A stretch of DNA of 64,000 nt, from sequence record NC_042136.1; one strand, written 5' to 3'. How positions within the stretch are numbered: the stretch's first letter is position 1; every line of letters starts with the position of its first letter. The translations under genes and the position numbers were made by a program. Below the pieces are notes generated by a model. The model ran no database searches and was not told where the DNA came from. It was given only the letters and a program-made list of their open reading frames with translations. Below are positions 432 to 51,444 of this stretch, one piece after another.

Positions 432-788
432 ATGGAAATGACTAAAACAACTAAAGCACGCCTAGCAACAGTAGCAGCAACAGCAGTTAACGCAACAGTA
501 GCAGCAACTCTATTTGACTCTAAAGCTATCGCGGCTTACCACCTAGTTACTGGTGGTATCCAAACTGCTATGACTGAAGTACCTGACGACTTTGAATACG
601 GTAACAAAGAAATGGCAATCCACACTGGTAGCATGCTAGCAGGTGGTACACTAGCATCATCTCTACTAAAAGTAGTTGGCATGGCAATCGACAAAGCTAC
701 ACTACCTGAAGAAGATGAAGCAACTACAGAAGAAGTGAATCAATTGATCACTGAGCTTACTGGTTTAGAAAACCCAGAAGAAGCATAA
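432..788 (+). CDS. small Ala/Gly/Thr-rich membrane protein with acidic tail (early)
   Basis: ORF track starts at 393; SD GAGGA favours ATG 432; three weakly hydrophobic helices and acidic C-terminus; highly biased codons. Confidence 0.75.
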   Translation: MEMTKTTKARLATVAATAVNATVAATLFDSKAIAAYHLVTGGIQTAMTEVPDDFEYGNKEMAIHTGSMLAGGTLASSLLKVVGMAIDKATLPEEDEATTEEVNQLITELTGLENPEEA

Positions 789-794
789 TAAGAA

Positions 795-828
795 TAACTA
801 CCTACCTCCGAAAGGAGGTAGGTAGTTA
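795..828. terminator. bidirectional terminator hairpin with CCTACC core
   Basis: 15-bp stem TAACTACCTACCTCC/GGAGGTAGGTAGTTA, GAAA loop, between convergent genes. Confidence 0.85.
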
Positions 829-848
829 ACAGTTCTTTATTTTTTTGT

Positions 849-2618
849 CTAAGCTGCTTTCGGTAAAGCCTCACCGAATTCTTCTTCAAAGAGTTCTGGG
901 AAGACTTCTTCCATTTCTTCGAATCCCGGGAAACGATGTAACGTCTGACACAAACTCACCGCATTAGCTTTTGGCGAGGAAGCGTAGTTGACTCCGACTT
1001 CACGGAACTCCAATGGATTCAATCCTTGTATCGCACACGCTTCTATTCTCGTGGTCTTATTCGAAACGTTAAGCGCTACGGTGGCCGTAGGGTATGCACC
1101 CTCCACGTCAACGTCATCGGTTAAACCACGTCCTCTAGAACGTATGTGTGGCATCCCTATGAATATCGCTTTACCGTTATCCGCATTTTTCTCAGTTTCT
1201 AATAAAGCAATCCAATCACCCAATGTCGGTTTATGTTTATCCAATTCATCTTTACCACCACGTCCCTTGGTTCCCCAAATGTAACCATGCTCCGCAGCAA
1301 TGAAAGATAACTCGTTAGAGATACATTTCGGTTGAGATGGATAATCAAAGAACTCCGTAGACTTTAATAGCAATGGTAAGTTCAGTGCAATGTCGTTGGT
1401 TTTCTCATCTTGTTCTTCGATAACCAAGTTATCAGAGATGTTGTACATGCAGTATTCGAACTTAGCATTACGTTGCATCCATCTGTGCCAAGCACCTTTA
1501 CCTTGGGTTAGATGAGACCCTTTATCCGTGTAAAGCTTACCCTCGATGCCGTTGTCTTGTGCAGTGAATTCCAATGAGTAAGATTCTTTCTTACCTTTAG
1601 GAGCATTCTTAATCGCGTAGAAACTAGCACCGTCCAACCACTGCCATTTAGCCGCCGCTCGAACCGTAGGGTATTGCTCTTGCCACTCTAACGGTTGGGA
1701 GTCACCGTTCTCTTTACGTTTGTGAGTACGTCCCTTATCGTATTTGTAGTAATGAAACTCTTTAGGGATACTAGGGTCTGAGTAAACTTCTTCTAGATTA
1801 CGATTACCCATAATCAACGCATGTTCATTACGCTGCATATCGTAGGAAGCGTTCCATGATGAAATGAAATCTGGTTCCCACATATGCCAAACTTTAATGT
1901 TGTTCTCAACACATTCAGTTTGAGTATCCACTAAGTTGTAATGCACCGTAGCGTTACGTCGTCTTAGACGTTCACCGATCAGTTCTTCTTCTGACGCTTT
2001 AAGACCCTTCATGATCTCTTCGTCAGACATACCATCAAAGAAACTACGCACTACGGAGAAAAAGATTTTCTCTTTCATCGTAGTTGAAGCCATGATCACA
2101 TCTTCACCATCACCGTTGACCATATCGGTCTCTACGTCGTACGCAGCTAAGGTGGAAGGTTCAGTTTCTTGGAACTCTTCATAACGTTCAAAGTATTTGT
2201 GTTTGATCAATACTGGAACTGGGGTTTCACAACCAAAGACATAAGGGTTGTTTTTCATCATCATTAAGTCGGCGTTACGATCATTAATACCGTGTAACAC
2301 ACGCTTAATGCTCATCGCTAAACGCGCTTGTGTAGATTTATATTCTTTCACTAAACGTTTATCGATGTAATCTTTTTTCTGTTCGAACTTACGGTATTTT
2401 TCACGAACGATGTAGAATGAACGAACGTAATCCGCCACTTTCAAAAACTGATTGGTACGGTCACCGTTTTCATGGATAGTCGTTTGTTTAATGAACGTCA
2501 TATCCTTAAGCTTGTCTCGTTTTGAAGGAACGTAGACAGCGTGTTTGCACACTTTTCCTTTAACAGGAGATTCGCTCGAAGGCGGCGTGTAACTATAATC
2601 CATTTCAGCCTTCCTCAT
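849..2618 (-). CDS. family B DNA polymerase, N-terminal/3'-5' exonuclease half of a split polymerase (phiKZ gp82-like)
   Basis: ExoI AYDVETD, ExoII SWNASYD, ExoIII-like YNISD, PolB motif A variant DVEGAYPT near the C-terminus; motifs B and C absent. Confidence 0.8.
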   Translation of the reverse strand: MRKAEMDYSYTPPSSESPVKGKVCKHAVYVPSKRDKLKDMTFIKQTTIHENGDRTNQFLKVADYVRSFYIVREKYRKFEQKKDYIDKRLVKEYKSTQARLAMSIKRVLHGINDRNADLMMMKNNPYVFGCETPVPVLIKHKYFERYEEFQETEPSTLAAYDVETDMVNGDGEDVIMASTTMKEKIFFSVVRSFFDGMSDEEIMKGLKASEEELIGERLRRRNATVHYNLVDTQTECVENNIKVWHMWEPDFISSWNASYDMQRNEHALIMGNRNLEEVYSDPSIPKEFHYYKYDKGRTHKRKENGDSQPLEWQEQYPTVRAAAKWQWLDGASFYAIKNAPKGKKESYSLEFTAQDNGIEGKLYTDKGSHLTQGKGAWHRWMQRNAKFEYCMYNISDNLVIEEQDEKTNDIALNLPLLLKSTEFFDYPSQPKCISNELSFIAAEHGYIWGTKGRGGKDELDKHKPTLGDWIALLETEKNADNGKAIFIGMPHIRSRGRGLTDDVDVEGAYPTATVALNVSNKTTRIEACAIQGLNPLEFREVGVNYASSPKANAVSLCQTLHRFPGFEEMEEVFPELFEEEFGEALPKAA

Positions 2619-2685
2619 TTTATGACTGGATTGTATTTAGGTCTAGTATAATGCGCATTGTAGTAAATTTTTAAAGGTAATCCTA

Positions 2686-4436: not shown

Positions 4437-5888
4437 ATGAGTAAATCTCCTAATTTCGTTGAGATGGGTACAGCGACTACCGTTGGGGTTGATAATACCG
4501 ATCGTAAGGTTCTTATCGACTTAGACGAGACTTACGACGATCCAACAAACCCAGAAGAAACTAAAGCTTTAGAAGAATACCTAAAAACGGGTAAGCTAAG
4601 CAAGAAGGCTTTACAACAAGCATTGGTTACAGGTACTGAACGTTTTGAACCGGGATGCACGACACTGAATGGTGTCTTGGGTGGTGAATCCTTCATGGAG
4701 AACCTTTCTAAGCGTGCTGGTGAATTTGTTAAGGCGGTAATTAAAGCTATCAATGCTGCCGTTGGTTGGTTTTTGAATCAAACGCGTCGCATTCTGTCTT
4801 TCTTTACCGATACTCGTGAAATCACCAAAGCGGATGAAGTATTGCGTGATATCGAAAGTAAGTTGCAAGAAATGGGCGGGCCTAACTTTAATGTTATCGA
4901 TGTTCGTGAGCTGTTTGAGAATCAACCGGTTAACAGTCGTCGTCTTGCCGTAGTTCACAGTTTGCGTGCCCGCAATGATTCTACTTTAGAAGCGTCTAAG
5001 AAGCTCCTAGAGTGTGTCCCTGCGCTTAAAGAGTTCATCGTTGACATCAACCGTCAAGAACTCAATATCCGTCGTGTGAACGATCGTTTCCGTGCTTCTA
5101 TTGGTAAACTCCGTAAACGAGTACGTGAAGATTCCCTAAGCATGGGTGATCGTGCTAACTGGCAAGCTGATGTCATGGACATGGCAGCTCAAAACTTTAA
5201 CAAGCAGAAACTGCAACGTAACTACGCTAAGTTAATTCAAATCATGACTGATCGTACTTCCGGTAATTTGGATGACGATGCATTGTTTGCGAATTCTACT
5301 AAAGCGATGAGCTCGTTGTTGATCGCCACTAAAGATGACGTTCCTATGGGTGAATTCGCTGAACTCGCCAACGTAGGTAACCAAATCCGCGACATCGTGG
5401 TGGGCAACCCAGATGAGTTTTCTGTTCGACTTGATACGGATGAACTGAAAAAGCTTCAGGACATGGTCAAGCTAGATGACCTAGAGTTCTTGAAGAACAT
5501 CCCGGGACAGGACACTAACGAACTCGTTAACGTTTACCAGATGTACGTTTCTAAAGCAGGAAGTTACATCTCGGTACTTCGTCAGTCTGCGGATGTTGCG
5601 CTTAAGTTCTCAGCAGAGATCAACTACATCGCAGAATGGGCTCAACGTTACCAGTTCTTGCTCAGTGTTTATTCTTTAGGTACTCTTGAACAACGTAAAG
5701 AGCGCATCAAAGAGATCGAAACACAAACCGGTGTACCTTTGAATACTGGTAATCTGGAAGATGTTCCAGAAGACGTACGTCAAGGTATGGATCGCTCCCT
5801 ACAACGTATTTACGATTCGTTACTACCGGGTGTGAAACGTGAGATGAATTCACTTGGACGTAAACTTAACATGAAGGTGAACCTCTAA
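4437..5888 (+). CDS. internal head protein (processed-propeptide family)
   Basis: acidic N-terminal propeptide ending in GGE-SFMENL followed by an amphipathic helix, as in the paralogues at 13-24 kb. Confidence 0.65.
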   Translation: MSKSPNFVEMGTATTVGVDNTDRKVLIDLDETYDDPTNPEETKALEEYLKTGKLSKKALQQALVTGTERFEPGCTTLNGVLGGESFMENLSKRAGEFVKAVIKAINAAVGWFLNQTRRILSFFTDTREITKADEVLRDIESKLQEMGGPNFNVIDVRELFENQPVNSRRLAVVHSLRARNDSTLEASKKLLECVPALKEFIVDINRQELNIRRVNDRFRASIGKLRKRVREDSLSMGDRANWQADVMDMAAQNFNKQKLQRNYAKLIQIMTDRTSGNLDDDALFANSTKAMSSLLIATKDDVPMGEFAELANVGNQIRDIVVGNPDEFSVRLDTDELKKLQDMVKLDDLEFLKNIPGQDTNELVNVYQMYVSKAGSYISVLRQSADVALKFSAEINYIAEWAQRYQFLLSVYSLGTLEQRKERIKEIETQTGVPLNTGNLEDVPEDVRQGMDRSLQRIYDSLLPGVKREMNSLGRKLNMKVNL

Positions 5889-6619
5889 TGATTCGTGATA
5901 TTAATAAACGCTATCGTAAGGTGCGTAACGATGTTCGAGAATACGAACCAACCGTAACGACGTTCAAAGAGAAAATCGATGAATTGTCTGATGCGATGAA
6001 GCGTCCTGTGAGTTACGACACTTTAATGGAGATGTGTAAAATTGCTGAAGCGCTACCTAGTGAAATCCGAGAGGTGAAACTTCGTTGCACTAAAGCACCT
6101 TCCCACATCAATGGTGAACAATTCCGTTATTGTGTCCGTCTTCGTAGCAACAACGGTTTCGTAGACGTAAGTGTCATCAACGAAGGTAATCGTTTGTTAC
6201 ACGCTTACTATGAGTTAGCGGAATTGATGATTAAGTACACCACGGAACATCTTCAAGCAAATCCTAGTGAAACAAACAATCATAAAGCGATTTGTTTGTT
6301 CCGTGACATTGCTCGTTTCCAAACTTACATCGACGGTCCTTACTACGATGACCGAATGGAAATAGACTGGGAACGCATTTCTCCTGATGTGGATTACCTC
6401 ACTAACGGTTACACCATCGAAACCGTTAAGGATCGTATTCTTAACATAGCGAAGCGTGACCAAGTTAAAGGTCTTTACATTTGGAACTTGAAGTGGGATG
6501 TTGATCGTTTGTTGTCTATGGTTAACGCTATGGAGCAACTCATCGCTCGCATCGCTATATTTGGTATCGCTCGATTAGAGCTAACACCAGAGCAACTGGA
6601 TGCTATCGATCCTCAATAA
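5888..6619 (+). CDS. hypothetical protein
   Basis: 243-aa ORF overlapping previous stop (TAATG). Confidence 0.75.
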   Translation: MIRDINKRYRKVRNDVREYEPTVTTFKEKIDELSDAMKRPVSYDTLMEMCKIAEALPSEIREVKLRCTKAPSHINGEQFRYCVRLRSNNGFVDVSVINEGNRLLHAYYELAELMIKYTTEHLQANPSETNNHKAICLFRDIARFQTYIDGPYYDDRMEIDWERISPDVDYLTNGYTIETVKDRILNIAKRDQVKGLYIWNLKWDVDRLLSMVNAMEQLIARIAIFGIARLELTPEQLDAIDPQ

Positions 6620-6626
6620 GCAAATA

Positions 6627-6659
6627 AAGTACTCCTACCCGATAAGGGTAGGAGTACTT
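6627..6659. terminator. bidirectional terminator hairpin with CCTACC core
   Basis: 14-bp stem AAGTACTCCTACCC/GGGTAGGAGTACTT between convergent genes. Confidence 0.85.
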
Positions 6660-6667
6660 ATGTTTTT

Positions 6668-9589
6668 TTATTTATTTTTGTAGTGTGGTAAGAAAGCAAA
6701 CGAAATGGCTTCTTTAACACTGGATACGCCATCACCGGTGTTCTCTAAACGTTTACGAACAGAGAAACTGGTTGTCGTATCTAAGTTGGACACCACATCG
6801 ATTTCGGCGTCATCCGCTAATGCGTTCAAACGTAGGTCAACCACATCATTAGGTAACGCGTCTTTCAGAGCACGAACTATCTCATTGTTAGAAACCGTGG
6901 TGTTTTTCAACATCTGGTTAATAACGTTGGAAGTAATCGACTTAATGGCTGGACGAACCGTATCACTACGAATACCAGCGGGTGTTAAATAGAACACCAC
7001 GTTGAACGACAGATCAGCACGAACTTTAGTTTCGAATTGAGAGTTCATCACCACGTTGATCAAACCAAGTTTCACTTTAGGAGCAAACATCAAATCAGTC
7101 TTATCACGCATTTGACTTTCGAAGTTAGCTAAGTCCTGCATAACGACGTCGGTGATATAAGCTTTGGTTTGTCTAGCGTAGTTTAGATCGTACTCGTCAT
7201 TTGAGAAATGATAGTTGCCATCGAAACAAACGAAGTCCATGTAGTACTTAAGTTGACTAGGAATAAGTTTGATCGGTTGTCCATTTTCATCTTTAACTAA
7301 CGAGTTCTTATAATGCAGTACGATCGGTGAACCATCTTCCGTCGTCATCACGTCGCCAGCTCGGTGTTCCAATACCAAACGATCGTTCTCGAAAACGTAC
7401 TGGTCGTTCTCATCACGTTTAAAGGTATCTTCTGGCCAAGTCTCATAGACGTCTTCTGAATAACGCTTATACTGAGCATCCCCTAACACTGGATGAGCTC
7501 GATGGTATAAGTTTTTCAGAGCCTTACCAAAGATAAGGTCGTAGCCAACTTCAATCAAACACGTCATGTTGTTAGGATATAACGCAGGATCAATCAACAG
7601 ATCTTGTTCTGTTGCTTTCTCACCTTCGGACCCTTCTACCAAGAACAGTACACGGATGTCAGATTTAAGCTCGGCTTTAACACTTGAAATCGGACGACTG
7701 AACATAAACATGTTGGTAAAGGTTATTAGGTCACGTTTATCAACATCGAAGTTAGAATCCAACTCAAATGCCCATACACGGTCATTATCACTGTTACGAC
7801 CCAATACCGTACCTTTCAACGTAGCGATGTCTCTAGAGTCCGCTGGGCTGAAGTAAAGCTGTGCACCGACTTTCTCATCGTTCATCTTACGATAAGCTTC
7901 ATCGCCACGTGTTACCATGATAATGCGGTAGCCACGATCACGATACTCCACTTTAATAGACTGCACTGATAGTTCGATCCCCAAGGTCTCTTTTTCATAC
8001 AAGAAGTTTTGGTTATCATACTTTGGTGTGTCTAATAAATAAGGGCGAACCTTGACAGTACCGCCGGTAACGTCTAACACCGTGTGATACGGTGTGTAGG
8101 TTAACATGCGGTTATTCACGTAATCCAGACGTTCATCATTCGTCATCAAACGGATGGCTTCGATTTGGGTCTTAGGTAAAATACGCGTGCCGGTGTCGGT
8201 AACGTCGAACACGGTACCCGGAGGCATGGTAATGCGTTGTTCGTTATCGTACACCACTCCCGAATTTCGGAGTTCATCCACAGAGTACATAACTTTAGCA
8301 ATGTATGCGTTAACCGTCATTACTGAGTTATCAGCATCAGTGTACGTTGGTAGTTCACGTGTGACTTGATACAAACGGTTGGTGTAAACATCGATCAGTT
8401 TCGTTGCTGAATAACCATAAGCGTTTAAGTAATTACTTAACTGGTTTTCAGAAATAGGAATCGACTGACGACGAGCATTGTTGATGGTTTCGTTCTTGAG
8501 TTCTAAGAACGTACGAGGGTTACTACCACCCGTCACTGCGGTTTGTATTTCCCATGCGGAGTTGTTGACCTCACGTATTGGGGCCGCGTATTTACTCAAC
8601 AAGTCTTTATCATAGTCAAAGTCTAAATACGTAGCGGTATGGGTAAGTGAACGTAACGTACCTAAGTCTTGTTCGTATTCCCCACGAGTCGTGTAAACGA
8701 CTAACGTCAACGTACCTACCCCTTGACCATTATTAATGAAAGTCTCTGGGATAGAATAAACGAATTGTTGGTTATCTTGATCGACGTCTATGGTTAATGT
8801 AACTTCATTTTGGTTAAAGACTTGGTTGTTGTAAGCAATACGAAGTTCACGCGTTTCTCCGTTTGTTGGTTTCAACCAAGCCCGAACTCCAAACAGTTTG
8901 TCTTTGAAGTTATAGGTTTCTTTCAAACCCGCAGATGGAGTAACCGCAATCTTGCGTTTCGTTTCACCCTTTAATTGTTTAACCGGAATATCCACATAAA
9001 GATATTCTTGGTCTAGGATGTTTACCGTACGACGCTCTAGGGAGTTGGTCGTGATGTTGAAATAAGGGTGTTGTGCTTTAGAGTCATAAACGACTTGCAC
9101 ATGTCCTGCTTCCATCAAACGAAACTCAATCGCATGTACTATGCTAAACGGAATGCCGTAGACCTCGATTACTGTATCTTTAGGCATGGTTAGTTTACGA
9201 TAACGGTTTACTACCGTACCAGATTGTTCTTCATACGCTACCGCTAAGCGACGTATTTCAGATACCGGTAAAGAGAAACGCATTACGGCATGGCTCGGAT
9301 TACCAAACAGACCATAAAACTCGTAATCACTCATGTGACGGAATAAGTCTGAAGGTTTACGGGCATGATCACGATACAGACGAGACTCCACATCGCCTAA
9401 TCGGTTGATCAGTCCCGCTGATTCTGAACAGATAGTGTCCAGCGCTCTTACAAAAGGATGAGAAGAACTTTCAAAGGAAACACGTTTCCCAGCGAAAGCT
9501 TCCGCCGTACGGTCTAACACTAACGAGATAGCTCGACTAGGGTTATTCGCAATACGGTTTAGTTCATCATAGGTTAACTCACCGTTCAT
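6668..9589 (-). CDS. baseplate wedge-like virion protein (phiKZ gp87-like)
   Basis: 973 aa, beta-rich; TAVTGGSNPRTFLELK resembles the GG-x-x-x-E-x-x-E-L motif of baseplate J/T4 gp6 proteins; synteny. Confidence 0.55.
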   Translation of the reverse strand: MNGELTYDELNRIANNPSRAISLVLDRTAEAFAGKRVSFESSSHPFVRALDTICSESAGLINRLGDVESRLYRDHARKPSDLFRHMSDYEFYGLFGNPSHAVMRFSLPVSEIRRLAVAYEEQSGTVVNRYRKLTMPKDTVIEVYGIPFSIVHAIEFRLMEAGHVQVVYDSKAQHPYFNITTNSLERRTVNILDQEYLYVDIPVKQLKGETKRKIAVTPSAGLKETYNFKDKLFGVRAWLKPTNGETRELRIAYNNQVFNQNEVTLTIDVDQDNQQFVYSIPETFINNGQGVGTLTLVVYTTRGEYEQDLGTLRSLTHTATYLDFDYDKDLLSKYAAPIREVNNSAWEIQTAVTGGSNPRTFLELKNETINNARRQSIPISENQLSNYLNAYGYSATKLIDVYTNRLYQVTRELPTYTDADNSVMTVNAYIAKVMYSVDELRNSGVVYDNEQRITMPPGTVFDVTDTGTRILPKTQIEAIRLMTNDERLDYVNNRMLTYTPYHTVLDVTGGTVKVRPYLLDTPKYDNQNFLYEKETLGIELSVQSIKVEYRDRGYRIIMVTRGDEAYRKMNDEKVGAQLYFSPADSRDIATLKGTVLGRNSDNDRVWAFELDSNFDVDKRDLITFTNMFMFSRPISSVKAELKSDIRVLFLVEGSEGEKATEQDLLIDPALYPNNMTCLIEVGYDLIFGKALKNLYHRAHPVLGDAQYKRYSEDVYETWPEDTFKRDENDQYVFENDRLVLEHRAGDVMTTEDGSPIVLHYKNSLVKDENGQPIKLIPSQLKYYMDFVCFDGNYHFSNDEYDLNYARQTKAYITDVVMQDLANFESQMRDKTDLMFAPKVKLGLINVVMNSQFETKVRADLSFNVVFYLTPAGIRSDTVRPAIKSITSNVINQMLKNTTVSNNEIVRALKDALPNDVVDLRLNALADDAEIDVVSNLDTTTSFSVRKRLENTGDGVSSVKEAISFAFLPHYKNK

Positions 9590-10628
9590 CAGGTACCCAC
9601 CATTCTAGTTCCATGGTATTAATATTAATCCATGGGTAAGCTTTGTAGTTATTGTCTAGGAATTCAGTTCGGTCTATTTTACGATAATGTTTATGACGTT
9701 TACCGTCAGCCATATCTTCATTAAACTTCACTGTTGCTCCGTTGAAAGCATCCACACATTCAAAAGTGTCCGCACGAGCACCGATACTTTTGAATTGCAC
9801 ATCAAAGGTATCTTGTCCGGGACCACGCCGACCAGCTTGAGTCATATCTATGCTCGCCAAACTACCTTGAGGGTGTGTGGTCGGAACCGAGCTAATGGTC
9901 ATGTAGATCGATTCAATATTCACCATGTTCGGGTTTAAGAACAAATGATAGATACGAGTATCAAAGTCCCAATAGTTTTGGTATTGTGCTTCCCAGTACG
10001 GTTCCATTCCGTGATCACCTAAACGGACTTCAGGGATGTAATGCTCCCACACACCAAACAAATAAGGAAGTATCCCGCCCTTTACGTTTTTGTAAGTCTG
10101 GTTAATGGTGATGATACCATTGGTTTCCATGATACCTTCAATCCATTGATAGACTTCCTGACGTATCCCGGGTTGAGTGGTGCTGGACTCGAGTTCCAAA
10201 TCAGGGAAACCATCAGACTTTTGTAACAAGTTGGTTAATAACGGCATCCACGCGTTCTTATTATCTAGAGCAGGATGGTTGTAAGTTCGACCGACACGAT
10301 AGTCTAATAAACCACGTATATAACCCCCTAAAGAGTTAGAGTCAGCTTTGAACAACTTAGCGAATCTGGGGGACTTAGAAACGTTTTCATCACTGAGGTT
10401 CAATACAGGTCGAGGGATGAACATTAATCCTATGATGTCATCAGCCATAGGTGCGAGTTGAACGCCACTGCCCAATATTTTTATGCCATGTAAAATATTG
10501 CCGAGTGGACTTAGATAACTACCACCACCGTTTTCTTTGAAGACGTCGTTTAACCAAACTTTTACTTTGGGATCGACTTCTCCAGTAAACGGATTTAGAT
10601 TATCCGGTTGTTTGTCAATATTGTCCAT
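9579..10628 (-). CDS. conserved virion/tail protein (phiKZ gp88-like)
   Basis: 349 aa, coupled to the wedge-like gene; synteny only. Confidence 0.5.
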   Translation of the reverse strand: MDNIDKQPDNLNPFTGEVDPKVKVWLNDVFKENGGGSYLSPLGNILHGIKILGSGVQLAPMADDIIGLMFIPRPVLNLSDENVSKSPRFAKLFKADSNSLGGYIRGLLDYRVGRTYNHPALDNKNAWMPLLTNLLQKSDGFPDLELESSTTQPGIRQEVYQWIEGIMETNGIITINQTYKNVKGGILPYLFGVWEHYIPEVRLGDHGMEPYWEAQYQNYWDFDTRIYHLFLNPNMVNIESIYMTISSVPTTHPQGSLASIDMTQAGRRGPGQDTFDVQFKSIGARADTFECVDAFNGATVKFNEDMADGKRHKHYRKIDRTEFLDNNYKAYPWININTMELEWWVPDER

Positions 10629-10665
10629 TTCTTATTTCCAAATTAATTAACTTAGAGAGATTATT

Positions 10666-11823
10666 ATGAGCTTTTTCGTTAGTCTAGGGAACACGTTAGC
10701 GTCAACTGCTAAGGCTGTTCTCGGTGGTACAGAATTTGAAGCTGTCGCAACAGCCGCCGAGGTTGGTGCAAAACACGGTGGCGCAGCCTACGGGACCGCT
10801 CAAGGTCAAAGTGTGGTTGCCGCAGCTCAAAAAACAATGATTCGTCCAATGGTTGTTATTGAGCAAAATCTAGTCCATCAGGACTATGCTACCGACCTAA
10901 TGACAATCATACAATTGCGTGATATTCAGGCTACTCTGACACATTTACGCATGCAAGGTACGATCGCTGGCGTGCAAATTGAGAAGTACATTGACCCTAT
11001 TCGTCCTACTCGTATGGCGGGACGTCGTCTGGGTAGCTTCGGTGGTCTGGAGTCATTCGGTGGGACTCACCTAGTGAAACCTGAACCTAAAGTTGATGGT
11101 CAAGAAGCACTAGATAATAAAGAAGAGAAACAAACACCAGATGGTGTTAACATCGATTCTAAAGCTGTGCAGACTGTGTTGACTGAATACACACCGTTAG
11201 CCCTAGGTCGTACGGTAGATGCACAAATCACGTTAGATAACAAAACGATTACGTTCCCTCTAACGTTCCGTCAAATCCCGGTACCTATGGGACAACGTGA
11301 TCTAGAACGTGTGTTCGATCACGCGAAAGGTGAAGACTCTTGGAAAACACGTTTTGATAAACTTGACGTGGGTATGATTACTACACCAGAACTACTTACT
11401 GGTCGTGATGTAATCAAAGAGAAATTCCGTGTACGTTTGGACGACCTTAAAGCCAACACGAAATACATCAACGATTCTATCGAACGTCAACGCAACCATA
11501 TCGTGAAAGCCGCTAAGACAGGTGAGATGTCCATGAACAACATGGCGAACACTTTTGTTATTAGCGACACGACTGCTCGTCAAATCGAGTTAGTAACGGG
11601 CAAACGTTTTGATAATGTTTCTCAACGTGAAACTTTGTGGAAAGGTTTGAGTGCAAACACGATTGTTATCTGTAACGAAGCACGTGGTTTGTTTACTTTC
11701 TACACCATGGGTATCAAGTTGCCTGAGCAATACACTCGCAACGACATCAAACAAAAAGCAGCTAAAGAGTCTAGTGTAGGTTCTCTGGCAGACATCATGA
11801 AACTTCTTAACGGTGGTATGTAA
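10666..11823 (+). CDS. internal head (inner-body-like) protein
   Basis: GGLE-SF and DGQE-A processing-like sites; first gene of head-protein cluster. Confidence 0.6.
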   Translation: MSFFVSLGNTLASTAKAVLGGTEFEAVATAAEVGAKHGGAAYGTAQGQSVVAAAQKTMIRPMVVIEQNLVHQDYATDLMTIIQLRDIQATLTHLRMQGTIAGVQIEKYIDPIRPTRMAGRRLGSFGGLESFGGTHLVKPEPKVDGQEALDNKEEKQTPDGVNIDSKAVQTVLTEYTPLALGRTVDAQITLDNKTITFPLTFRQIPVPMGQRDLERVFDHAKGEDSWKTRFDKLDVGMITTPELLTGRDVIKEKFRVRLDDLKANTKYINDSIERQRNHIVKAAKTGEMSMNNMANTFVISDTTARQIELVTGKRFDNVSQRETLWKGLSANTIVICNEARGLFTFYTMGIKLPEQYTRNDIKQKAAKESSVGSLADIMKLLNGGM

Positions 11824-12704
11824 TGAACATCATTGAATTTCGAAAACAACTTAAACCAGTCAAGAAACAAGATTTGTTGACTTTACTTAAAAACCACAAA
11901 GATTTCGTAGAAGGGATTCAAGACAACCTTCGTTTGTTGGAGTCTGACGGTGTAGAACTAAGTAAAGTTCTAATGGGCTGGTATGAACACCAACGTTTCA
12001 GCAAAGCGTGCCGTGCGACCACATCGAACTCTATTGCAGACGAAACCATCATTAAAGTGGCTTCTGAATCTATCGCGGCATTACTTACTTTGTTAGAGAA
12101 AGACTTCAAAGCAGGTCCTAACCTACTTGGTAAAGAAACCGTGACCATCCAACAAGTCAACGGTTTGATGTTAGACTCTTACATCACTTTTTGGGTAGAC
12201 TACTTATCTCGCCTCATGGACATGGCTACGTCTATGATGGTGAAAAACAAGCCAGCGGATAAAGTGGCACAAAAACCTGACTTAGAGTTCCTAAGTAAAA
12301 ACATTGATCGTTTTGGCGAACTAACGCACTTGTTCTTTGAACGCGGTGGTATCATCCTTAAACGTTACCGTTCTTCTCCTAAGATCGTAGCGGATGAGCA
12401 AACCATTGATGTGCTAGAACAAACCAAAGGTAAAGACTCAACGTTGGTACTAGCAACCAAACACATCGCCCCGCACAACTTCAACCCGGTCTACTGGTGG
12501 GATTACTGGATGATGGAAAACGCGCTTAAGTCTTATGAGCGTCACCAGAACTCCATCGAAGCGAATGCACAGAAGATCAGCTACTATCAAGATCTTCAAC
12601 ACCAAAACCCTTCTCCAGCTAACGAACTCATGATCGCTAAGCTAGAAGACCGCATCGTTAAAGCCCAAGCCGCAATGGAAGACATTGAAGCGAAATACGC
12701 CTAA
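11823..12704 (+). CDS. internal head protein
   Basis: 293-aa helical protein in head cluster; synteny. Confidence 0.55.
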   Translation: MNIIEFRKQLKPVKKQDLLTLLKNHKDFVEGIQDNLRLLESDGVELSKVLMGWYEHQRFSKACRATTSNSIADETIIKVASESIAALLTLLEKDFKAGPNLLGKETVTIQQVNGLMLDSYITFWVDYLSRLMDMATSMMVKNKPADKVAQKPDLEFLSKNIDRFGELTHLFFERGGIILKRYRSSPKIVADEQTIDVLEQTKGKDSTLVLATKHIAPHNFNPVYWWDYWMMENALKSYERHQNSIEANAQKISYYQDLQHQNPSPANELMIAKLEDRIVKAQAAMEDIEAKYA

Positions 12705-12715
12705 GGGAGGAAATA

Positions 12716-13234
12716 ATGAGTGATTTCCGTAAAGTAATCTACGGTTACGCCGACAGTCGTTTGATGGATCCTACTCTTACCGCCATGAACAGCATTTTAC
12801 GTGCTTACGTAAAAAGTGCGCAAGACATGGCTATGCGTATTGATCCTGCTTCTATCCAAGAAGTCCTAGATCTTGCTAACAAATTTGTTGGTGGTGATTT
12901 CAAACACTGGATGATGGCAAACTACGACCACGGTCTAGGTCCGCGAGCACGCTTAATCCGCATGATCGCTAAATACCTAGATGGTGGTATTTCTGACCGC
13001 ACACTAAGCCAAACTATCACTGCGGATGAACAGTACGTTACGACGACTGATCTTAAGTACGTGAAAGGTGCTTATCGTGGTGCAGTCGATCATCGTGATT
13101 ACGATGACATTGAACGTGTTATCGATAATCTTAAAGAAGATGATTTGTATCGTCTGGTCGAAGGGATTGGTCCTCAACTCTTTGCTCGTATGTTAATTAC
13201 CTTTAATGGAGAGTCAGCATATGGACGAGTCTGA
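12716..13234 (+). CDS. hypothetical virion-cluster protein
   Basis: 172 aa, SD GGAGG. Confidence 0.65.
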   Translation: MSDFRKVIYGYADSRLMDPTLTAMNSILRAYVKSAQDMAMRIDPASIQEVLDLANKFVGGDFKHWMMANYDHGLGPRARLIRMIAKYLDGGISDRTLSQTITADEQYVTTTDLKYVKGAYRGAVDHRDYDDIERVIDNLKEDDLYRLVEGIGPQLFARMLITFNGESAYGRV

Positions 13235-14492
13235 TCTAAACGAAGAGTTAGCGTCTATCAACGTTGTAACGTCCCCAGAACTAGCTGAACAAGCAACAGA
13301 GGGTCGTGACCTAGTACGTCTACAAGACGACATTCAACAGTCAATGGATCGTGTAGCGGCTATCAAGACAGTATTAGGTAACACGGAACCTAAAGACGTA
13401 ACGTTGTTATTCGGCAACATTATCGATCGTCAACTAGAACGTGTCGGTGTTCGTTCATTCAAAGAAGTGGATGGCTTAGAATCTCTAGGCCGTAGTATGA
13501 CACCTCGTCAATACCTAGATAGTCGCATCGCTGGATGTGAATCTTTCTTAAGCGAATTCGCTGATTGGACGAAGAACATCACTAAAAGCTTCTTATCGGA
13601 CGTCGTAGAGCGTCTAGCGTCGATTCGTCAAGACCATGAATCATTGGTCAAGAAATCCAACGCGTTGATGGAGATTGCCAAGAACCAAACCACGGTGTTC
13701 CCTAAAGACCACCTCAAACTGGGAATGGCAAACCGTGTGTTGTTGATCAACGGTCAGATGCCTAAAGATCTGGTTGCACAAGTCAACCGTTTCTCAGCAA
13801 CGACTCGAGCTATCACAACGAACTTCTACCGTATGAACCAAGCAAACACCAATGAGATCATTTCTTACTTTGGTGGTTTTGTTGGTAAGTCTGAAGAAGA
13901 AGCACGTCAGCGTTTGCTAATGATGCCGAAAGCTTTATCTAAATACCAGTTTAAAGAAGCCATGTTCCCGGTCAAAGAAGAAACAGACCAAGTTCATACT
14001 ACACGCGCTAGTGTGGAACTTATGGGTGACCGTCGTTACTTTAACTCGGTATTAGTACAACGTGACCCACTGAACAGTCAAAACGAGTTATCTGATTGGT
14101 TAGAACTTTACCGTAAATACGAAATCATCGAACTTCGTAAAGGTGAACGTGTCGACCAAGACGATCTAGAACTCACTGGCTTGGACCGCAGTAGCGTGGA
14201 TAAAGCCCTGAAAATGATTTCAGTTACTTTACGTGATATGGAAGCGCTGTTCAAAGAAGGTGATCGTTATTTGGTCAACGGTGACGAATATCGTAAGTTG
14301 CTGAATGTGGTGAAAGAAGGTGAGTGGACTGGTGAGCTTAAAGCAGACATCATTAACTCCTTTACTTCTTTGATCATGACTCGTAACAGTGAACAAGTCA
14401 AAATGCGTTCAGATGTGGTCCGTTACTCTACGTTAGTAATGATGGCTGTAATGAATGTGTGTGACGCATCAATGGAGCGTGACAATGGATAA
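13221..14492 (+). CDS. internal head protein, phiKZ_IP-like family
   Basis: likely start 13221 (SD GGAG; track start 13206); DGLE-S and AGCE-SF sites. Confidence 0.65.
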   Translation: MDESDLNEELASINVVTSPELAEQATEGRDLVRLQDDIQQSMDRVAAIKTVLGNTEPKDVTLLFGNIIDRQLERVGVRSFKEVDGLESLGRSMTPRQYLDSRIAGCESFLSEFADWTKNITKSFLSDVVERLASIRQDHESLVKKSNALMEIAKNQTTVFPKDHLKLGMANRVLLINGQMPKDLVAQVNRFSATTRAITTNFYRMNQANTNEIISYFGGFVGKSEEEARQRLLMMPKALSKYQFKEAMFPVKEETDQVHTTRASVELMGDRRYFNSVLVQRDPLNSQNELSDWLELYRKYEIIELRKGERVDQDDLELTGLDRSSVDKALKMISVTLRDMEALFKEGDRYLVNGDEYRKLLNVVKEGEWTGELKADIINSFTSLIMTRNSEQVKMRSDVVRYSTLVMMAVMNVCDASMERDNG

Positions 14493-15447
14493 CCCTGAGT
14501 ACACCCGAGAAGAACTACAGCGTGCTTTACAAGGCTTATCAGGTGAGGAATCCCTATTAAGTGACATTAAGTCCGCGCTGGGTTTTGAAACCAGTAAGGT
14601 GGAACAGGTAAAAGGTCTGGCAGACGGTAGTCTAGTCAACCAGTTTGCTCTAGGAGCAAATACGGTGGGTCGTCTAACCGCGAAGGCATTGGGGTATAAT
14701 GCAGGGGTGATCTCATCCCTGTTAACTCGTGTTAATTCGGTAGAAACCCATGACGTCTCGTGTTCTGGTAAGCTGATCAGTGACTTAACCGCCGAAGGTA
14801 ATCTAGACCATTTACTTCGTGATCAGAAAACCTTATCGGACACGATCTCTACGGTAATGAAATACCAAAGTGAACTAGAGTCGTACGGTAAAGAAATCCA
14901 GACGTTATTGAAAGCCGCATCAAATGCGAAAGATAACGCTGGTCTTACCGAAATCGCGACTAAGGTTGACATGGTGAAGTACCCGCCACTTAAGCTTGAT
15001 AAGAAAAATGGAGAGAACGACTACGAAAGTCAAGTTCTTCCAGCGGGCAAAGTGATCGGTAGTAAAGTTACTGCAAATGGTGCTTCTTATTCTTTCGACG
15101 GTTCTGGTGAATCCGTTGGAGCTCAAGATTACCATGTAGAGAAGTCAGACCTAAACAAATTCCTAAACCAAATGAAGTGGATCAACACCCAACAAAAAGC
15201 GTTGAGTGAAATGATTAACCGTTACGCCAAATTCGTTAAAGAGTGGGGTAATACGGTGAAAGATCTACAAACCAATTTGGATAAGACGGAAGGATTAAGT
15301 AAGAGCGTCACTAACCAACTGGTGACTAAGATGTCTCTTCCTACTCCTCAAGTGGAATTTTACACTTCTTTCTTACCACGTGTAATTGCTTACATTAACT
15401 ATTACGTGACACAAGGTTGCGACTTAGTAACCGAAGTCAGTAAATAA
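14485..15447 (+). CDS. internal head protein
   Basis: likely start 14485 (SD GGAG; track start 14455); SGEE-S site near N-terminus. Confidence 0.6.
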   Translation: MDNPEYTREELQRALQGLSGEESLLSDIKSALGFETSKVEQVKGLADGSLVNQFALGANTVGRLTAKALGYNAGVISSLLTRVNSVETHDVSCSGKLISDLTAEGNLDHLLRDQKTLSDTISTVMKYQSELESYGKEIQTLLKAASNAKDNAGLTEIATKVDMVKYPPLKLDKKNGENDYESQVLPAGKVIGSKVTANGASYSFDGSGESVGAQDYHVEKSDLNKFLNQMKWINTQQKALSEMINRYAKFVKEWGNTVKDLQTNLDKTEGLSKSVTNQLVTKMSLPTPQVEFYTSFLPRVIAYINYYVTQGCDLVTEVSK

Positions 15448-15456
15448 GGAGACGTC

Positions 15457-16758: not shown

Positions 16759-16762
16759 ATAA

Positions 16763-16790: not shown

Positions 16791-16823
16791 ATTATTGGTA
16801 ATTAAAGTCAAAAAGGAAAGGTA

Positions 16824-37743: not shown

Positions 37744-37788
37744 AGTTCTATATAACTTAAATGTACGAGCAACTAAAATGGAGGATGA

Positions 37789-38076
37789 GTGAACTTAGCA
37801 GCACTAGCAGGCGCTGTATTCGGAACTGGAATCACTTACGCTAGTACTGAATCAACAGGGCTCACTATTTTAAGTGCCGCTGCTGGTCTAGCGACCACAG
37901 TTATATTGGAAGATAAAGAGAACGAGTATTCGGGACCGGGTGATTTTACTAAAGCAGCTTGCGCTTCTTTAGCTCCTATATTACTCCACCGAGAAGAACC
38001 AGAACCCATCCCTTTCTCTTTCGATGAAGAGGATGAAGATTTCGACATACTTGATATGCCGCTTTATTTTGATTAA
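37789..38076 (+). CDS. small Gly/Ala-rich membrane protein with acidic tail
   Basis: GTG start after GGAGG; hydrophobic hairpin LAALAGAVFGTGITYAST...ILSAAAGLATTVI; acidic end; partial early-promoter match at 37748-37763. Confidence 0.65.
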   Translation: MNLAALAGAVFGTGITYASTESTGLTILSAAAGLATTVILEDKENEYSGPGDFTKAACASLAPILLHREEPEPIPFSFDEEDEDFDILDMPLYFD

Positions 38077-38083
38077 ATGCAGT

Positions 38084-38121
38084 AGAAGTTCCCTACCTCC
38101 ATTTGGAGGTAGGGAACTTCT
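38084..38121. terminator. bidirectional terminator hairpin with CCTACC core
   Basis: 17-bp perfect stem AGAAGTTCCCTACCTCC/GGAGGTAGGGAACTTCT between convergent genes. Confidence 0.85.
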
Positions 38122-50334: not shown

Positions 50335-50368
50335 CTTACCATCCTCCCCTAAGCGGGAGGATGGTAAG
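50335..50368 (+). terminator. intrinsic terminator hairpin
   Basis: 14-bp stem CTTACCATCCTCCC/GGGAGGATGGTAAG. Confidence 0.8.
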
Positions 50369-50382
50369 TATCTCTGCTTTAT

Positions 50383-50430
50383 TTTTTAACATACAGTTTA
50401 TTTCAGATCTATATAGTCTAGGTGTATAAG
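50383..50430 (+). promoter_or_regulatory. early promoter block, copy 2 of identical 48-bp repeat
   Basis: identical to 338-385. Confidence 0.7.
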
Positions 50431-50473
50431 TATACAAGTATTTAATCTACCAACTTTTATTAAGGATACTATT

Positions 50474-50920
50474 ATGTCAAACGAAGCTATGAACAAAATC
50501 CCAGCTAAATTACCACAAGAGCTACGCAACCTTATGAATGAAGACCAACTTAAAACCATGGATGAACTCGATGCTGAAATTGAAAAAGCTCGTGAGACTC
50601 TAAACAATGAACGTAAAGGCTACAACTCTGCTACTCTACTAGGCGGTCTAGTTGGTGCAGCTGGTGTTGCTATTACAACTCGCAGCATCGAAGCAGCGGT
50701 AACAGGTACCGTAGCCGCAGTAGCTGCTTCTTACCTAACTTCAGAAACCAACCGCGAAATCCAAACACTAAAAGACACTGGTATTGGTCTAGCGTCTGGT
50801 GCTACTGGCGCAGGTCTAGGTTTCCTAGGTTCTAAACTTCTTACTCACTTACTAGACGGTACTGGTGAGACTGAAACAACTGACGTTCCAGTAACCACTA
50901 CTGTTACTGAAGAACAATAA
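50474..50920 (+). CDS. glycine-zipper membrane protein with acidic tail (early)
   Basis: LLGGLVGAAGVAITTRSIEAAVTGTVAAVAAS and GIGLASGATGAGLGFLGS; strong codon bias. Confidence 0.8.
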   Translation: MSNEAMNKIPAKLPQELRNLMNEDQLKTMDELDAEIEKARETLNNERKGYNSATLLGGLVGAAGVAITTRSIEAAVTGTVAAVAASYLTSETNREIQTLKDTGIGLASGATGAGLGFLGSKLLTHLLDGTGETETTDVPVTTTVTEEQ

Positions 50921-50961
50921 TTAAATCCCTTTAACATCCCCACAACAGAGAGATATTCATC

Positions 50962-51444
50962 ATGTCAAACAAAGCAAACAACAACCAAGAAATCGAACGT
51001 GTAGAAGCAGCAGTAATGGGTGAAAACACTCAATCATCAGAAGTCGTTTACTCAACTGAACTCGCCGACGAGAACGGTGGACCTACTGAAGCTGAACTTA
51101 ACGATTTCCAAGAGAAACTTAAAGAAGCTGTAGAAACACAAGAAGCAAACGCTAAGGAAGCAAAAGAAACCGTGGAAGCTCTACGTGTTCGTGTAAACCT
51201 TAATCGTGTAGCGGGTGGTCTAGTAGGAACTTTAGCATCCGCTTTAGTAACACGCAACTACAGTGCAGTTGCTAGTGGCGTATGCGCAACCATCGCAGTA
51301 AGTGCTTCGATGGACAATGGACCTAGTGAAGAAGGTGCGTTATACAACACCGGTGTAGGATTCGCAGCTGGATTCACAACAGGTCTATTAGGTGGTACAC
51401 TAACTAACTTCCTAACAGGTTCTGATGAATCTGAAGAAGCATAA
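50962..51444 (+). CDS. glycine-zipper membrane protein, paralogue of previous gene
   Basis: VAGGLVGTLASALVTRNYSAVASGVCATIAVS and GVGFAAGFTTGLLGGTL. Confidence 0.8.
   Translation: MSNKANNNQEIERVEAAVMGENTQSSEVVYSTELADENGGPTEAELNDFQEKLKEAVETQEANAKEAKETVEALRVRVNLNRVAGGLVGTLASALVTRNYSAVASGVCATIAVSASMDNGPSEEGALYNTGVGFAAGFTTGLLGGTLTNFLTGSDESEEA

What the first reader, a model, noticed from the sequence alone, without database searches (positions are those of the whole stretch)
432..51444. Dispersed family of early, highly expressed Gly/Ala-zipper membrane proteins
Four small ORFs (432-788, 37789-38076, 50474-50920, 50962-51444) share one layout: small-residue hydrophobic hairpin, short polar linker, third hydrophobic helix, acidic tail. 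The 50 kb pair align clearly (GGLVG-x7-TR-x3-A-x3-G; TG-x-G-x-A-x-G). The 432 and 50474 loci sit directly behind the same 48-bp early promoter block, 37789 has a partial match, and three of the four show capsid-level codon bias. Inference: an undescribed early membrane-remodelling or pore system, for example acting on the early phage infection (EPI) vesicle known in chimalliviruses, or superinfection exclusion or membrane depolarisation.
Basis: partly seen in the sequence, partly recalled or inferred. Interest (0 to 1): 0.78.

Follow-up and report, generated by a model that had tools for sequence, protein, structure and literature searches.

The report
Small co-regulated early jumbo-phage proteins
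Four small, acidic, glycine/alanine-rich genes of the Vibrio jumbo phage VP4B do share an odd three-helix layout, and two of their loci sit behind a unique, near-invariant early promoter. Only three of the four look related, and nothing shows yet that they are membrane proteins or what they do.

Summary
The window is Vibrio phage VP4B (Tidunavirus, a nucleus-forming chimallivirus), record positions 124001-188000. The four ORFs are gp106, gp140, gp150 and gp151, all annotated as hypothetical.

**Confirmed**
- All four share the described layout, and they are the only 4 of 229 ORFs in the genome that do.
- gp150 and gp151 are tandem paralogues.
- gp106 and gp150 follow the same 48-nt block (47 of 48 identical).
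- gp106 and gp150 have capsid-like codon usage. gp151 is intermediate and gp140 is not.

**New**
- The block is an extended version of a roughly 24-copy early-promoter motif. That motif matches the virion-RNA-polymerase promoter mapped in phage AR9 and also precedes the nuclear-shell gene.
- The extended block occurs exactly twice per genome in six related phages. In every genome examined it lies in front of the gp106-like and gp150-like genes.

**Family claim: partly supported**
- gp140 is probably a distant relative of gp150/151.
- gp106 is not demonstrably related.

**Membrane claim: unproven**
- Hydropathy is at or below the usual transmembrane threshold.
- There are no significant hits to any characterised family or fold.
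- There is no evidence for a link to the early infection vesicle or for a pore.

Best reading: abundant immediate-early small proteins restricted to this clade. They probably self-associate through small-residue helices, possibly at the membrane.

The parts
293..327 (+). Perfect 15-bp stem-loop (likely terminator of the upstream unit) just before the gp106 promoter
   Evidence: Read directly from the sequence. The simple scan did not flag it because the T-run starts more than 2 nt after the stem.
338..389 (+). Extended early-promoter block of gp106. The 16-nt core is at 364-379 and the predicted transcription start is the G at 379.
   Evidence: 51/52 identical to 50383-50434. The core belongs to the roughly 24-copy genome motif. 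The spacing to the G matches the AR9 early promoter (PMC5312081). It is conserved in front of the orthologues in 7 phages.
380..431 (+). Predicted 52-nt leader of gp106 with its ribosome-binding site (420-425)
   Evidence: The leader is only about 51% identical to the gp150 leader.
432..788 (+). gp106, 118 aa, phrog_24498. It has a basic N-flank, two charge-free small-residue helices, an acidic loop, a third charge-free helix and a conserved acidic C-terminal helix motif. The annotated start at 393 is probably wrong.
795..828 (.). Bidirectional 15-bp hairpin terminator between gp106 and the convergent DNA polymerase gene
37748..37763 (+). Partial (15/16) match to the early-promoter core, 25 nt before the gp140 start codon. 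Its function is uncertain.
   Evidence: It lacks the upstream extension. The mismatch lies in the final GTG that holds the predicted start base.
37789..38076 (+). gp140, 95 aa, GTG start, phrog_30612. It starts directly with the helical hairpin and has a short third segment with a conserved Cys pair. Its strongly acidic tail ends in an invariant D-I-L-D-x-P motif.
38084..38121 (+). 17-bp hairpin terminator after gp140, facing the convergent DnaB-like helicase gene
50335..50368 (+). 14-bp stem-loop followed by a T-rich run, just before the gp150 promoter
   Evidence: Read directly from the sequence.
50383..50434 (+). Extended early-promoter block of gp150. The core is at 50409-50424 and the predicted start is the G at 50424.
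50474..50920 (+). gp150, 148 aa, phrog_24719, the 'a' copy of the tandem pair. It has a polar helical N-region, then the three-helix core and an acidic Thr-rich tail.
50962..51444 (+). gp151, 160 aa, phrog_24719, the 'b' copy. An acidic, low-confidence N-region covers residues 1-77. The three-helix core covers roughly residues 80-159 and has invariant Gly positions, including a GxxxG in helix 3. The gene has no promoter of its own, so it is probably co-transcribed with gp150.
51525..51887 (+). gp152, 120 aa, phrog_26115. It is not a family member but lies in the same predicted transcription unit, with no terminator before it.
   Evidence: It is syntenic in all relatives.
51889..51922 (.). Hairpin (15 pairs), scored as a terminator on the minus strand only, at the point where the gp150-151-152 unit meets the convergent virion-protein gene; the likely end of that unit

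Best explanation
Two transcription units (gp106 alone; gp150-gp151, probably with gp152) are driven by a unique, near-invariant, extended version of the phage's early promoter, of the virion-RNA-polymerase type. gp106 and gp150 also use capsid-like codons. These proteins are therefore most likely among the first and most abundant products after genome injection.

The products, together with gp140, are small and very acidic and are restricted to the Tidunavirus/Aphroditevirus clade. Their conserved core has three parts: two short charge-free helices rich in Gly/Ala/Ser/Thr joined by a 3-5-residue turn, a 12-15-residue acidic loop, and a third charge-free helix carrying conserved Gly positions. 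An acidic tail follows.

gp150 and gp151 are an old tandem duplication kept as a pair. gp140 is probably a distant relative. gp106 is an analogue whose common descent is not shown.

Inferred mechanism (not shown): the small-residue helices pack against each other into homo- or hetero-oligomers. The hairpin probably sits in, or on the cytoplasmic face of, the inner membrane, with the acidic N-regions and tails left in the cytoplasm to bind partners. The role would lie in early host take-over at the cell envelope.

My rough probabilities:
- Early and abundant expression: about 0.8.
- gp140 related to gp150/151: about 0.6.
- gp106 related to them: about 0.25.
- Membrane association: about 0.45.
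- Any specific function, such as superinfection exclusion or an EPI-vesicle role: 0.15 or less each.

The confidence given for this explanation (0.4) is for the statement as a whole, including the membrane-associated oligomer reading.
For: Promoter
- The 16-nt core has 17 exact and 8 one-mismatch copies in the genome, 24 of them on the + strand. They lie in front of the nuclear shell protein, DHFR, an RNA polymerase subunit, GroEL and others, and are absent before capsid and internal-head genes.
- Its form (a TATATTAT-like element, six bases, then G) equals the mapped AR9 early promoter.
- The extended block is 51/52 identical at the two loci.
- In IMG/VR it occurs 12 times, exactly 2 per genome in 6 genomes.
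- It precedes the gp106-like and gp150-like genes in every genome examined.
- The promoter stays 87-91% identical between phages whose proteins are only 25-45% identical.

Codon usage
- Ranks 3, 4 and 8 of 57 genes.
- No ACG codons for Thr, and for gp106 and gp150 no GGA/GGG codons for Gly, as in the capsid gene.

Family relations
-.

Core structure
- AlphaFold2 on 13 sequences gave pLDDT 76.6 and three helices.
- Charge-free runs of 14-20 columns are conserved in all three alignments.
- Gly positions are invariant.
- In the alignments, basic and aromatic residues flank the base of the hairpin.
- The layout is unique to these four of 229 ORFs.

Distribution
- Only 11 hits at E <= 0.001 among 1.84 billion representative proteins. 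All but one spurious repeat protein are 140-163 aa; those I could match to a record (by identity or near-identity, or through the Foldseek hits) come from this phage clade.
Against: - No expression data exist for this phage group. Timing and abundance are inferred only from the motif and codon usage.
- Hydropathy is not that of classical transmembrane helices. The Kyte-Doolittle 19-residue maxima are 1.22-1.60, and 38% of all phage ORFs reach 1.2.
- The charge-free runs are only 12-20 residues long.
- The loop between helices 2 and 3 is acidic, which does not fit the positive-inside rule for a three-pass topology (sequence).
- In the gp106 family, some members carry Glu/Lys inside helix 1.
- There is no significant match to any membrane-protein family or solved fold.
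- The holin matches in the viral structure library are not significant, E 0.5-9.
- The full-length gp151 model is poor, pLDDT 46.9.
- AR9 data show that a single deviation can inactivate such a promoter, so the gp140 promoter is doubtful.
Confidence: 0.4

Rival explanations
1. They are soluble, strongly acidic oligomeric proteins with no membrane role. The charge-free small-residue helices form the buried core of a helical bundle, for example a gp150/gp151 heterodimer. The acidic tails and N-regions act in the cytoplasm, for instance as decoys or binders of host or defence proteins.
For: - Hydropathy is below or at the transmembrane threshold and is typical of many soluble phage proteins.
- The helices are short, at 12-20 charge-free residues.
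- Net charge is -9 to -15.
- Each family conserves its own C-terminal acidic motif: an invariant helix motif in gp106 and D-I-L-D-x-P in gp140. These look like interaction motifs.
- The tandem pair is retained in five further phages (pTD1, phiKT1028, phiKT1019, PDCC-1, 2 TSL-2019) besides VP4B itself.
Against: - All three helices lack any charged residue across 8-14 divergent homologues, although the rest of each protein is about 20% charged. That is unusual for the exposed helices of an 80-residue soluble domain.
- Basic and aromatic residues flank the hairpin base, as at a membrane interface.
- The nearest non-family structural neighbours, though not significant, are three-helix membrane proteins.
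Confidence: 0.3
2. This is not one dispersed family. It is three unrelated clade-specific small-protein families (gp106; gp140; gp150/151) that converged on a similar low-complexity composition and length pattern. The shared promoter would reflect only a common need for strong early expression.
For: - They fall into three different PHROGs.
- BLASTP finds nothing between the families.
- gp106 against gp150/151 is marginal: probability 11.7%, and 5 of 150 block shuffles reach the score.
- gp106 against gp140 gives probability 0.7%.
- gp106 is absent from the HMM hits and the structure hits.
- gp140 differs in codon usage and lacks the extended promoter.
Against: - gp140 against gp150/151 aligns in register over 47 columns, with E = 6.5e-5 and z = 5.5 over shuffles that preserve composition.
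- gp140 is the top non-member of 1293 genome ORFs for the family HMM.
- gp140 appears at rank 11 in the structure search.
- Segment lengths match closely in all four proteins.
Confidence: 0.3
3. They are virion or assembly components made in large amounts. Capsid-like codon usage would then reflect structural abundance, with the proteins packaged or used late.
For: - Codon usage resembles that of the capsid and an internal head protein.
- The gp150-152 unit abuts a virion structural gene.
Against: - The promoter is of the class found before the nuclear shell, DHFR and RNA polymerase genes. It is absent before capsid and internal-head genes.
- RefSeq does not label any of them as a virion protein, although it does label neighbouring genes that way.
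- No virion proteome for this clade was found.
Confidence: 0.07
4. They are holin-like lysis proteins: three helices plus a charged C-terminal tail.
For: - They are small, with three helices and a charged tail.
- Several annotated holins appear among the weak structure-library matches, TM-score 0.43-0.57.
Against: - Those matches are not significant, E 0.5-9.
- No holin family is hit in PHROGs, Pfam or NCBIfam.
- Hydropathy is too low.
- The promoter is of the early type.
- The neighbours are replication genes and unknowns, not an annotated endolysin.
Confidence: 0.03

Closest known systems
Virion-RNA-polymerase early promoters of phiKZ-related jumbo phages (mapped in AR9; PMC5312081)
   Same: [quoted passage not shown] There are tens of copies per genome, placed before early genes.
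   Different: The gp106 and gp150 copies carry about 25 extra near-invariant upstream bases and a variant core. This extended form occurs only twice per genome. No transcript mapping exists for this clade.
PHROG families phrog_24498, phrog_30612 and phrog_24719 (unknown function)
   Same: The four proteins are full-length members, with E from 1e-48 to 1e-73.
   Different: The PHROGs treat them as three unrelated families without annotation. The probable gp140 to gp150/151 link and the shared promoter are not captured there.
Class I (three-helix) phage holins
   Same: Small size, three helices and a charged C-terminal tail. They are weak structural neighbours.
   Different: There is no significant sequence or fold match. 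Hydropathy is lower, the tail is acidic rather than mixed or basic, the promoter is early, and there is no lysis-cassette context.
Glycine-zipper small membrane proteins (the Gly-zipper Pfam families, SlyB/PCP-type hairpins; recalled from general knowledge)
   Same: Short helical hairpins rich in Gly/Ala with GxxxG-type spacing. Gly residues at i and i+4 are invariant in gp140 helix 1 and in helix 3 of gp150/151.
   Different: No profile match at E <= 1. There is no lipoprotein or signal sequence. These proteins add a third helix and long acidic regions.
Small early membrane proteins of other phages that block superinfection (T4 Imm/Sp type; recalled from general knowledge)
   Same: Small, expressed early, partly hydrophobic, and an accessory gene set restricted to one clade.
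   Different: No named relative came back from any search. The hydrophobic segments here are far weaker. No functional evidence exists.

Membership tests
PHROG phrog_24719 (gp150, gp151), phrog_24498 (gp106), phrog_30612 (gp140) | Significant full-length match to the family profile | tested here: met
   E = 1.4e-50, 2.4e-73, 1.8e-61 and 1.7e-48 respectively.
   BLASTP E = 6e-9. Both belong to the same PHROG. Syntenic tandem pairs occur in five further phages.
   hhalign probability 64%, E = 6.5e-5. The score was 31.6 against 18.5 +/- 2.4 in 150 block shuffles, none of which reached it. HMM E = 0.0035, the best non-member of 1293 ORFs. The strength is moderate, not conclusive.
   Probability 11.7% against gp150/151, with 5 of 150 shuffles reaching the score. 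Probability 0.7% against gp140. No HMM hit and no structure-library hit.
Integral membrane protein with classical transmembrane helices | At least one segment of about 19 or more residues with Kyte-Doolittle mean of about 1.6 or more | tested here: inconclusive
   Maxima are 1.57 (gp106), 1.60 (gp140), 1.33 (gp150) and 1.22 (gp151). True hydrophobic ORFs of the same phage reach 2.1-2.9. No dedicated topology predictor was available.
Class I holin | Profile or fold match to a holin family | tested here: not met
   No holin family in Pfam, PHROGs or NCBIfam. Structure-library matches to holins have E 0.5-9.
Class I holin | Late expression within a lysis cassette next to an endolysin | tested here: not met
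   The promoter motif is of the early type. The neighbours are DNA polymerase, helicase, unknowns and a virion protein. Expression itself was not measured.
Glycine-zipper Pfam families | Match to a Gly-zipper profile | tested here: not met
   No such family at E <= 1.
Glycine-zipper Pfam families | Conserved GxxxG or GxxxGxxxG spacing in a helix | tested here: met
   Gly residues at i and i+4 are invariant in gp140 helix 1 (positions 8 and 12) and in helix 3 of gp150/151 (gp151 positions 133 and 137). gp151 itself continues to position 141.
Early (virion RNA polymerase) promoter class of phiKZ-related phages | Conserved AT-rich element with a G six bases downstream, repeated before early-type genes | tested here: met
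   There are 17 exact and 8 one-mismatch copies. They lie in front of the nuclear shell, DHFR, RNA polymerase subunit and GroEL genes, and are absent before capsid genes. The form equals the AR9 element.
Early (virion RNA polymerase) promoter class of phiKZ-related phages | Transcripts that start at the predicted G within minutes of infection, independent of protein synthesis | not testable with these tools
   No transcriptome for VP4B or its relatives was found.

The most novel reading that the evidence does not exclude
gp106 and gp150/151 (with gp140) would be phage-made hairpin proteins whose helices are too short to cross the bilayer. They would insert as wedges into one leaflet of the inner membrane or of the early infection (EPI) vesicle. 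There they would shape or open it for hand-over of the genome to the protein nucleus. That would make them a bacterial-virus counterpart of the membrane-shaping hairpin proteins of eukaryotic cells and their viruses. It would also make them the first phage-encoded membrane components of the chimallivirus early compartment.
Probability: 0.07. Interest if true: 0.85.

Novelty: new member of a known kind. Interest (0 to 1): 0.4.

Why it matters
If the inference from promoter and codon usage holds, these are among the first and most abundant proteins made by a whole clade of nucleus-forming Vibrio and Photobacterium phages, yet they have no annotation and no relatives outside it.

The exclusive pairing gives a concrete, testable handle on the immediate-early programme of chimalliviruses. 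An invariant 48-nt promoter occurs twice per genome, and in each of the genomes examined it precedes the same two small-gene loci.

If the proteins do sit in membranes, they would be candidates for the still unknown phage-encoded factors that act on the early infection vesicle or the cell envelope. If they are soluble, they are candidates for abundant early decoys or host-factor binders.

The work also corrects several annotations: the gp106 start codon, unannotated homologues in phiKT1028, and a truncated homologue in pTD1.

Tried and rejected
**Searches that gave nothing significant**
- Pfam, NCBIfam, PDB sequence profiles and the PDB fold library. The weak top hits are all far below threshold, and I treat them as noise. 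They were a Tim17-like outer envelope pore protein, an alpha-xenorhabdolysin subunit and a thylakoid protein.
- The word-based protein search found only 2-4 close relatives per query.
- tblastn with gp150 or gp151 found only VP4B, because the low-complexity filter masks most of the protein. I recovered the orthologues by synteny, using gp149 as the anchor.
- Rfam found nothing in the window.
- The promoter pattern gave no hit in JGI metagenome contigs.
- Literature searches found no transcriptome or virion proteome for this clade, and no known phage-encoded membrane protein of the EPI vesicle. JADA, the known early EPI-associated protein, is a 721-aa unrelated protein.

**Controls and side tests**
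- Full column shuffling is too lenient a control for hhalign, because both family pairs beat it. I replaced it with block shuffles that keep local composition.
- The conserved 4-bp CCUU/AAGG stem in the leader shows no covariation.
- Three other genes have promoters with 38 of 52 matches to the block: gp025, gp041 and gp082. I tested them as extra family members. None shows profile similarity, although all three have hydrophobic or small-residue segments.
- Within-genome gene conversion of the promoter was rejected. Promoter identity is about 87-91% in every type of comparison.

I went on using the larger alignment only for local statistics in scripts.

- Slip: while reasoning about glycine-rich helices, I wrote out from memory a fragment of a cellular protein (an ATP synthase subunit).
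- I also did a hand estimate with octanol-scale values recalled from memory. It pointed the same way as the Kyte-Doolittle result, and I do not rely on it.
- The IUPAC search patterns are short regulatory motifs that I derived from the aligned promoter copies.

Full report
**What the window is.**
A 2.5-kb piece is 100% identical to Vibrio phage VP4B, NC_042136.1. The window equals record positions 124001-188000. VP4B is a Tidunavirus (Gorgonvirinae), a nucleus-forming jumbo phage with an annotated nuclear shell protein and split RNA polymerases. The four ORFs are gp106, gp140, gp150 and gp151, all labelled 'hypothetical protein'.

**The ORFs are real genes.**
Each has full-length, indel-in-frame homologues in the seven other cultured relatives:
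- gp106-like genes were read in six further phages. Five are aligned in A1: pTD1, phiKT1019, phiKT1028, PDCC-1 and 2 TSL-2019. Aphrodite1 was read from its ORF.
- gp140-like genes were found in all seven by tblastn, and six are aligned.
- gp150-like genes occur at a syntenic site in six further phages. Five carry a tandem pair and Aphrodite1 has a single copy.

Position 432 has a ribosome-binding site and matches the whole PHROG profile. The upstream ATG is missing in relatives.

**The shared layout.**
All four proteins read the same way:
- a short basic flank (absent in gp140);
- a charge-free helix of 15-18 residues;
- a turn of 3-4 residues;
- a second charge-free helix of 16-17 residues;
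- an acidic loop of 12-15 residues;
- a third charge-free segment of 11-26 residues;
- an acidic tail.

I turned this into a rule and applied it to 229 non-overlapping ORFs of the whole genome. Each fetched piece was scanned separately. Eighteen stretches have three such runs. Only these four ORFs combine them with a small-residue share of 0.57-0.68 and a short acidic tail. All other matches are at 0.44 or below. The charge-free runs are conserved columns in all three family alignments.

**Are they one family?**
- gp150 and gp151 are clear paralogues. BLASTP gives E = 6e-9 and both belong to phrog_24719.
- In the core region, cross-genus identities are slightly higher for a-a (32%) and b-b (30%) than for a-b (25-27%). 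This suggests the duplication predates the two genera.
- gp140 against gp150/151: the profile comparison aligns the hairpins in register over 47 columns, with probability 64% and E = 6.5e-5.
  - With the hairpin columns shuffled among themselves, the score falls from 31.6 to 18.5 +/- 2.4, and none of 150 shuffles reaches the observed value.
  - The gp150/151 HMM ranks gp140 first among the 1291 remaining genome ORFs, with E = 0.0035.
  - The gp151 core model finds the database model of gp140 at rank 11 in the viral structure library. That hit is not significant on its own.
  - I take gp140 as a probable distant relative.
- gp106 has no BLASTP, HMM or structure hit. Its profile probabilities are 11.7% and 0.7%. 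Five of 150 block shuffles reach its score. Homology is not shown.

**The promoter.**
- The block at 338-389 recurs at 50383-50434 with 51 of 52 bases identical. Each copy follows a perfect stem-loop.
- Its 16-nt core (window 364-379) belongs to a genome-wide motif with 17 exact and 8 one-mismatch copies, 24 of them on the + strand. They lie 20-95 nt before genes that include the nuclear shell protein, DHFR, an RNA polymerase subunit and GroEL.
- Capsid and internal-head genes lack the motif.
- The form is a TATATTAT-like element, six bases, then G. This is the experimentally mapped virion-RNA-polymerase early promoter of AR9. That paper states that such promoters are shared by phiKZ-related phages (PMC5312081).
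- Early timing is therefore a well-grounded inference, not a measurement.
- The extended block is special. A pattern covering it matches IMG/VR 12 times, exactly twice in each of six genomes.
- Upstream alignments from seven phages show it only before gp106-like and gp150-like genes, with 47 invariant columns.
- Promoter identity is 87-91% in all comparisons, while the proteins are 25-45% identical. This points to purifying selection rather than recent copying.
- The leaders are only about 51-83% alike.
- gp140 has just the core, 15 of 16, with the mismatch in the final GTG. AR9 data warn that single deviations can abolish activity.
- gp151 has no promoter and lies 41 nt after gp150. The next terminator-like hairpin (scored on the opposite strand) follows gp152. 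So gp150-151-152 is one predicted unit and gp106 is monocistronic.

**Codon usage.**
The reference was capsid + sheath + nuclear shell, and 57 window genes were ranked:

| Gene | Score | Rank of 57 |
|---|---|---|
| gp106 | 0.734 | 3 |
| gp150 | 0.647 | 4 |
| gp151 | 0.517 | 8 |
| gp140 | 0.335 | 44 |

gp106 and gp150 avoid GGA/GGG, and gp106, gp150 and gp151 avoid ACG, as the capsid gene does.

**What the proteins are.**
- No characterised family or solved fold matches.
- A profile search of 1.84 billion representative proteins found 11 hits at E <= 0.001. Ten are 140-163-aa proteins, and those I could match to a record belong to the same phage clade; one is a spurious repeat protein.
- AlphaFold2 on full-length gp151 with 4 sequences was poor (pLDDT 46.9), and the N-terminal 77 residues had low confidence.
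- The core alone with 13 sequences gave pLDDT 76.6, pTM 0.66 and three helices.
- In the viral structure library only the orthologues are significant. Next come non-significant three-helix holins, gp150, a phage EL protein and gp140.

**Membrane or not.**

Against:
- Kyte-Doolittle 19-residue maxima are 1.22-1.60. In this genome 38% of ORFs reach 1.2, including capsid (1.39), shell (1.46) and sheath (1.25). Truly hydrophobic ORFs of this phage reach 2.1-2.9.
- The runs are short.
- The loop between helices 2 and 3 is acidic.

For:
- Charged residues are completely and consistently absent from all three helices, in proteins that are otherwise about 20% charged.
- GxxxG-type glycines are invariant.
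- Basic and aromatic residues flank the base of the hairpin.

I put membrane association at about 0.45 and a soluble oligomer at about 0.3. Nothing bears on EPI vesicles, pores or exclusion. The papers I read describe host membrane proteins and the soluble early protein JADA at the vesicle, but no phage-encoded membrane protein.

**Verdict.**

The genes are clade-restricted ORFans, an ordinary category in jumbo phages. What lifts them above ordinary is the exclusive, invariant promoter pairing and the capsid-like codon usage in early genes.

**Housekeeping.**
- I slipped once by writing a remembered fragment of a cellular protein in my reasoning. It was used nowhere.

Noticed in passing
window 56729-56989 and 57017-57277: An exact 261-nt direct repeat with 288-nt spacing. 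The annotated 69-aa gp155 (57027-57236) is an in-frame, identical copy of the last 69 codons of gp154 (54840-56948). This is either a real tandem duplication or an assembly artefact.
   Followed up: partly
L003 30715-33930 (VP4B record coordinates; outside the window): Six consecutive small genes (gp025-gp030) each carry a strongly hydrophobic segment, with Kyte-Doolittle 19-residue maxima of 1.7-2.9. gp025 sits behind an early promoter that shares 38 of 52 bases with the gp106/gp150 block. This cluster is a better candidate than the finding's genes for early phage-made integral membrane proteins.
   Followed up: partly
L003 41293-41638 and L005 230-441 (VP4B gp041 and gp082): Two more small genes lie behind promoters with 38 of 52 matches to the block. 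gp041 (87 aa) has three segments rich in Gly/Ala/Thr/Val. gp082 (44 aa) has a hydrophobic C-terminus. Neither shows profile similarity to the three families.
   Followed up: yes
window 38047-38076 (gp140 C-terminus): The acidic tail ends in a motif that is invariant at D-I-L-D-x-P in all eight homologues, and there is a conserved Cys pair in the third segment. It looks like a short docking motif. The gene always lies tail-to-tail with the DnaB-like helicase gene.
   Followed up: partly
window 726-770 (gp106 C-terminus): A C-terminal acidic helix motif is the best-conserved part of the gp106 family, with 8 invariant positions in residues 101-112. The gene always lies tail-to-tail with a DNA polymerase gene.
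   Followed up: partly
window 364, 29629, 42694, 50409 (exact or family-type cores); 20622 and 37748 (one-mismatch cores): These are the copies of the early-promoter core inside the window. They precede gp106, gp130, gp144 and gp150. Weak copies lie before the internal head protein gp123 and before gp140.
   Followed up: yes
L011 2201-2914, L018 401-685, L019 401-688: There are annotation gaps in relatives. The phiKT1028 record has no CDS for its gp149-like and gp140-like genes. pTD1 annotates only the last 56 codons of its gp140-like gene.
   Followed up: no
window 411-423 and 50452-50464: A conserved 4-bp stem (CCUU/AAGG) in the leaders overlaps the ribosome-binding site in nearly all 13 upstream regions. 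It is very weak (-3.5 kcal/mol consensus) and shows no covariation.
   Followed up: yes
window 62510-63447 (tail fibre gene gp162): Diverged direct repeats with a period of about 204 nt or multiples of it, 62-78% identical, lie inside the tail fibre gene. This suggests a repeated domain (families D2 and D8).
   Followed up: no
window 4680-22315: A 30-nt motif recurs in five genes, including the paralogous internal head protein genes (family D4). This is consistent with a shared N-terminal processing or targeting region in these paralogues.
   Followed up: no
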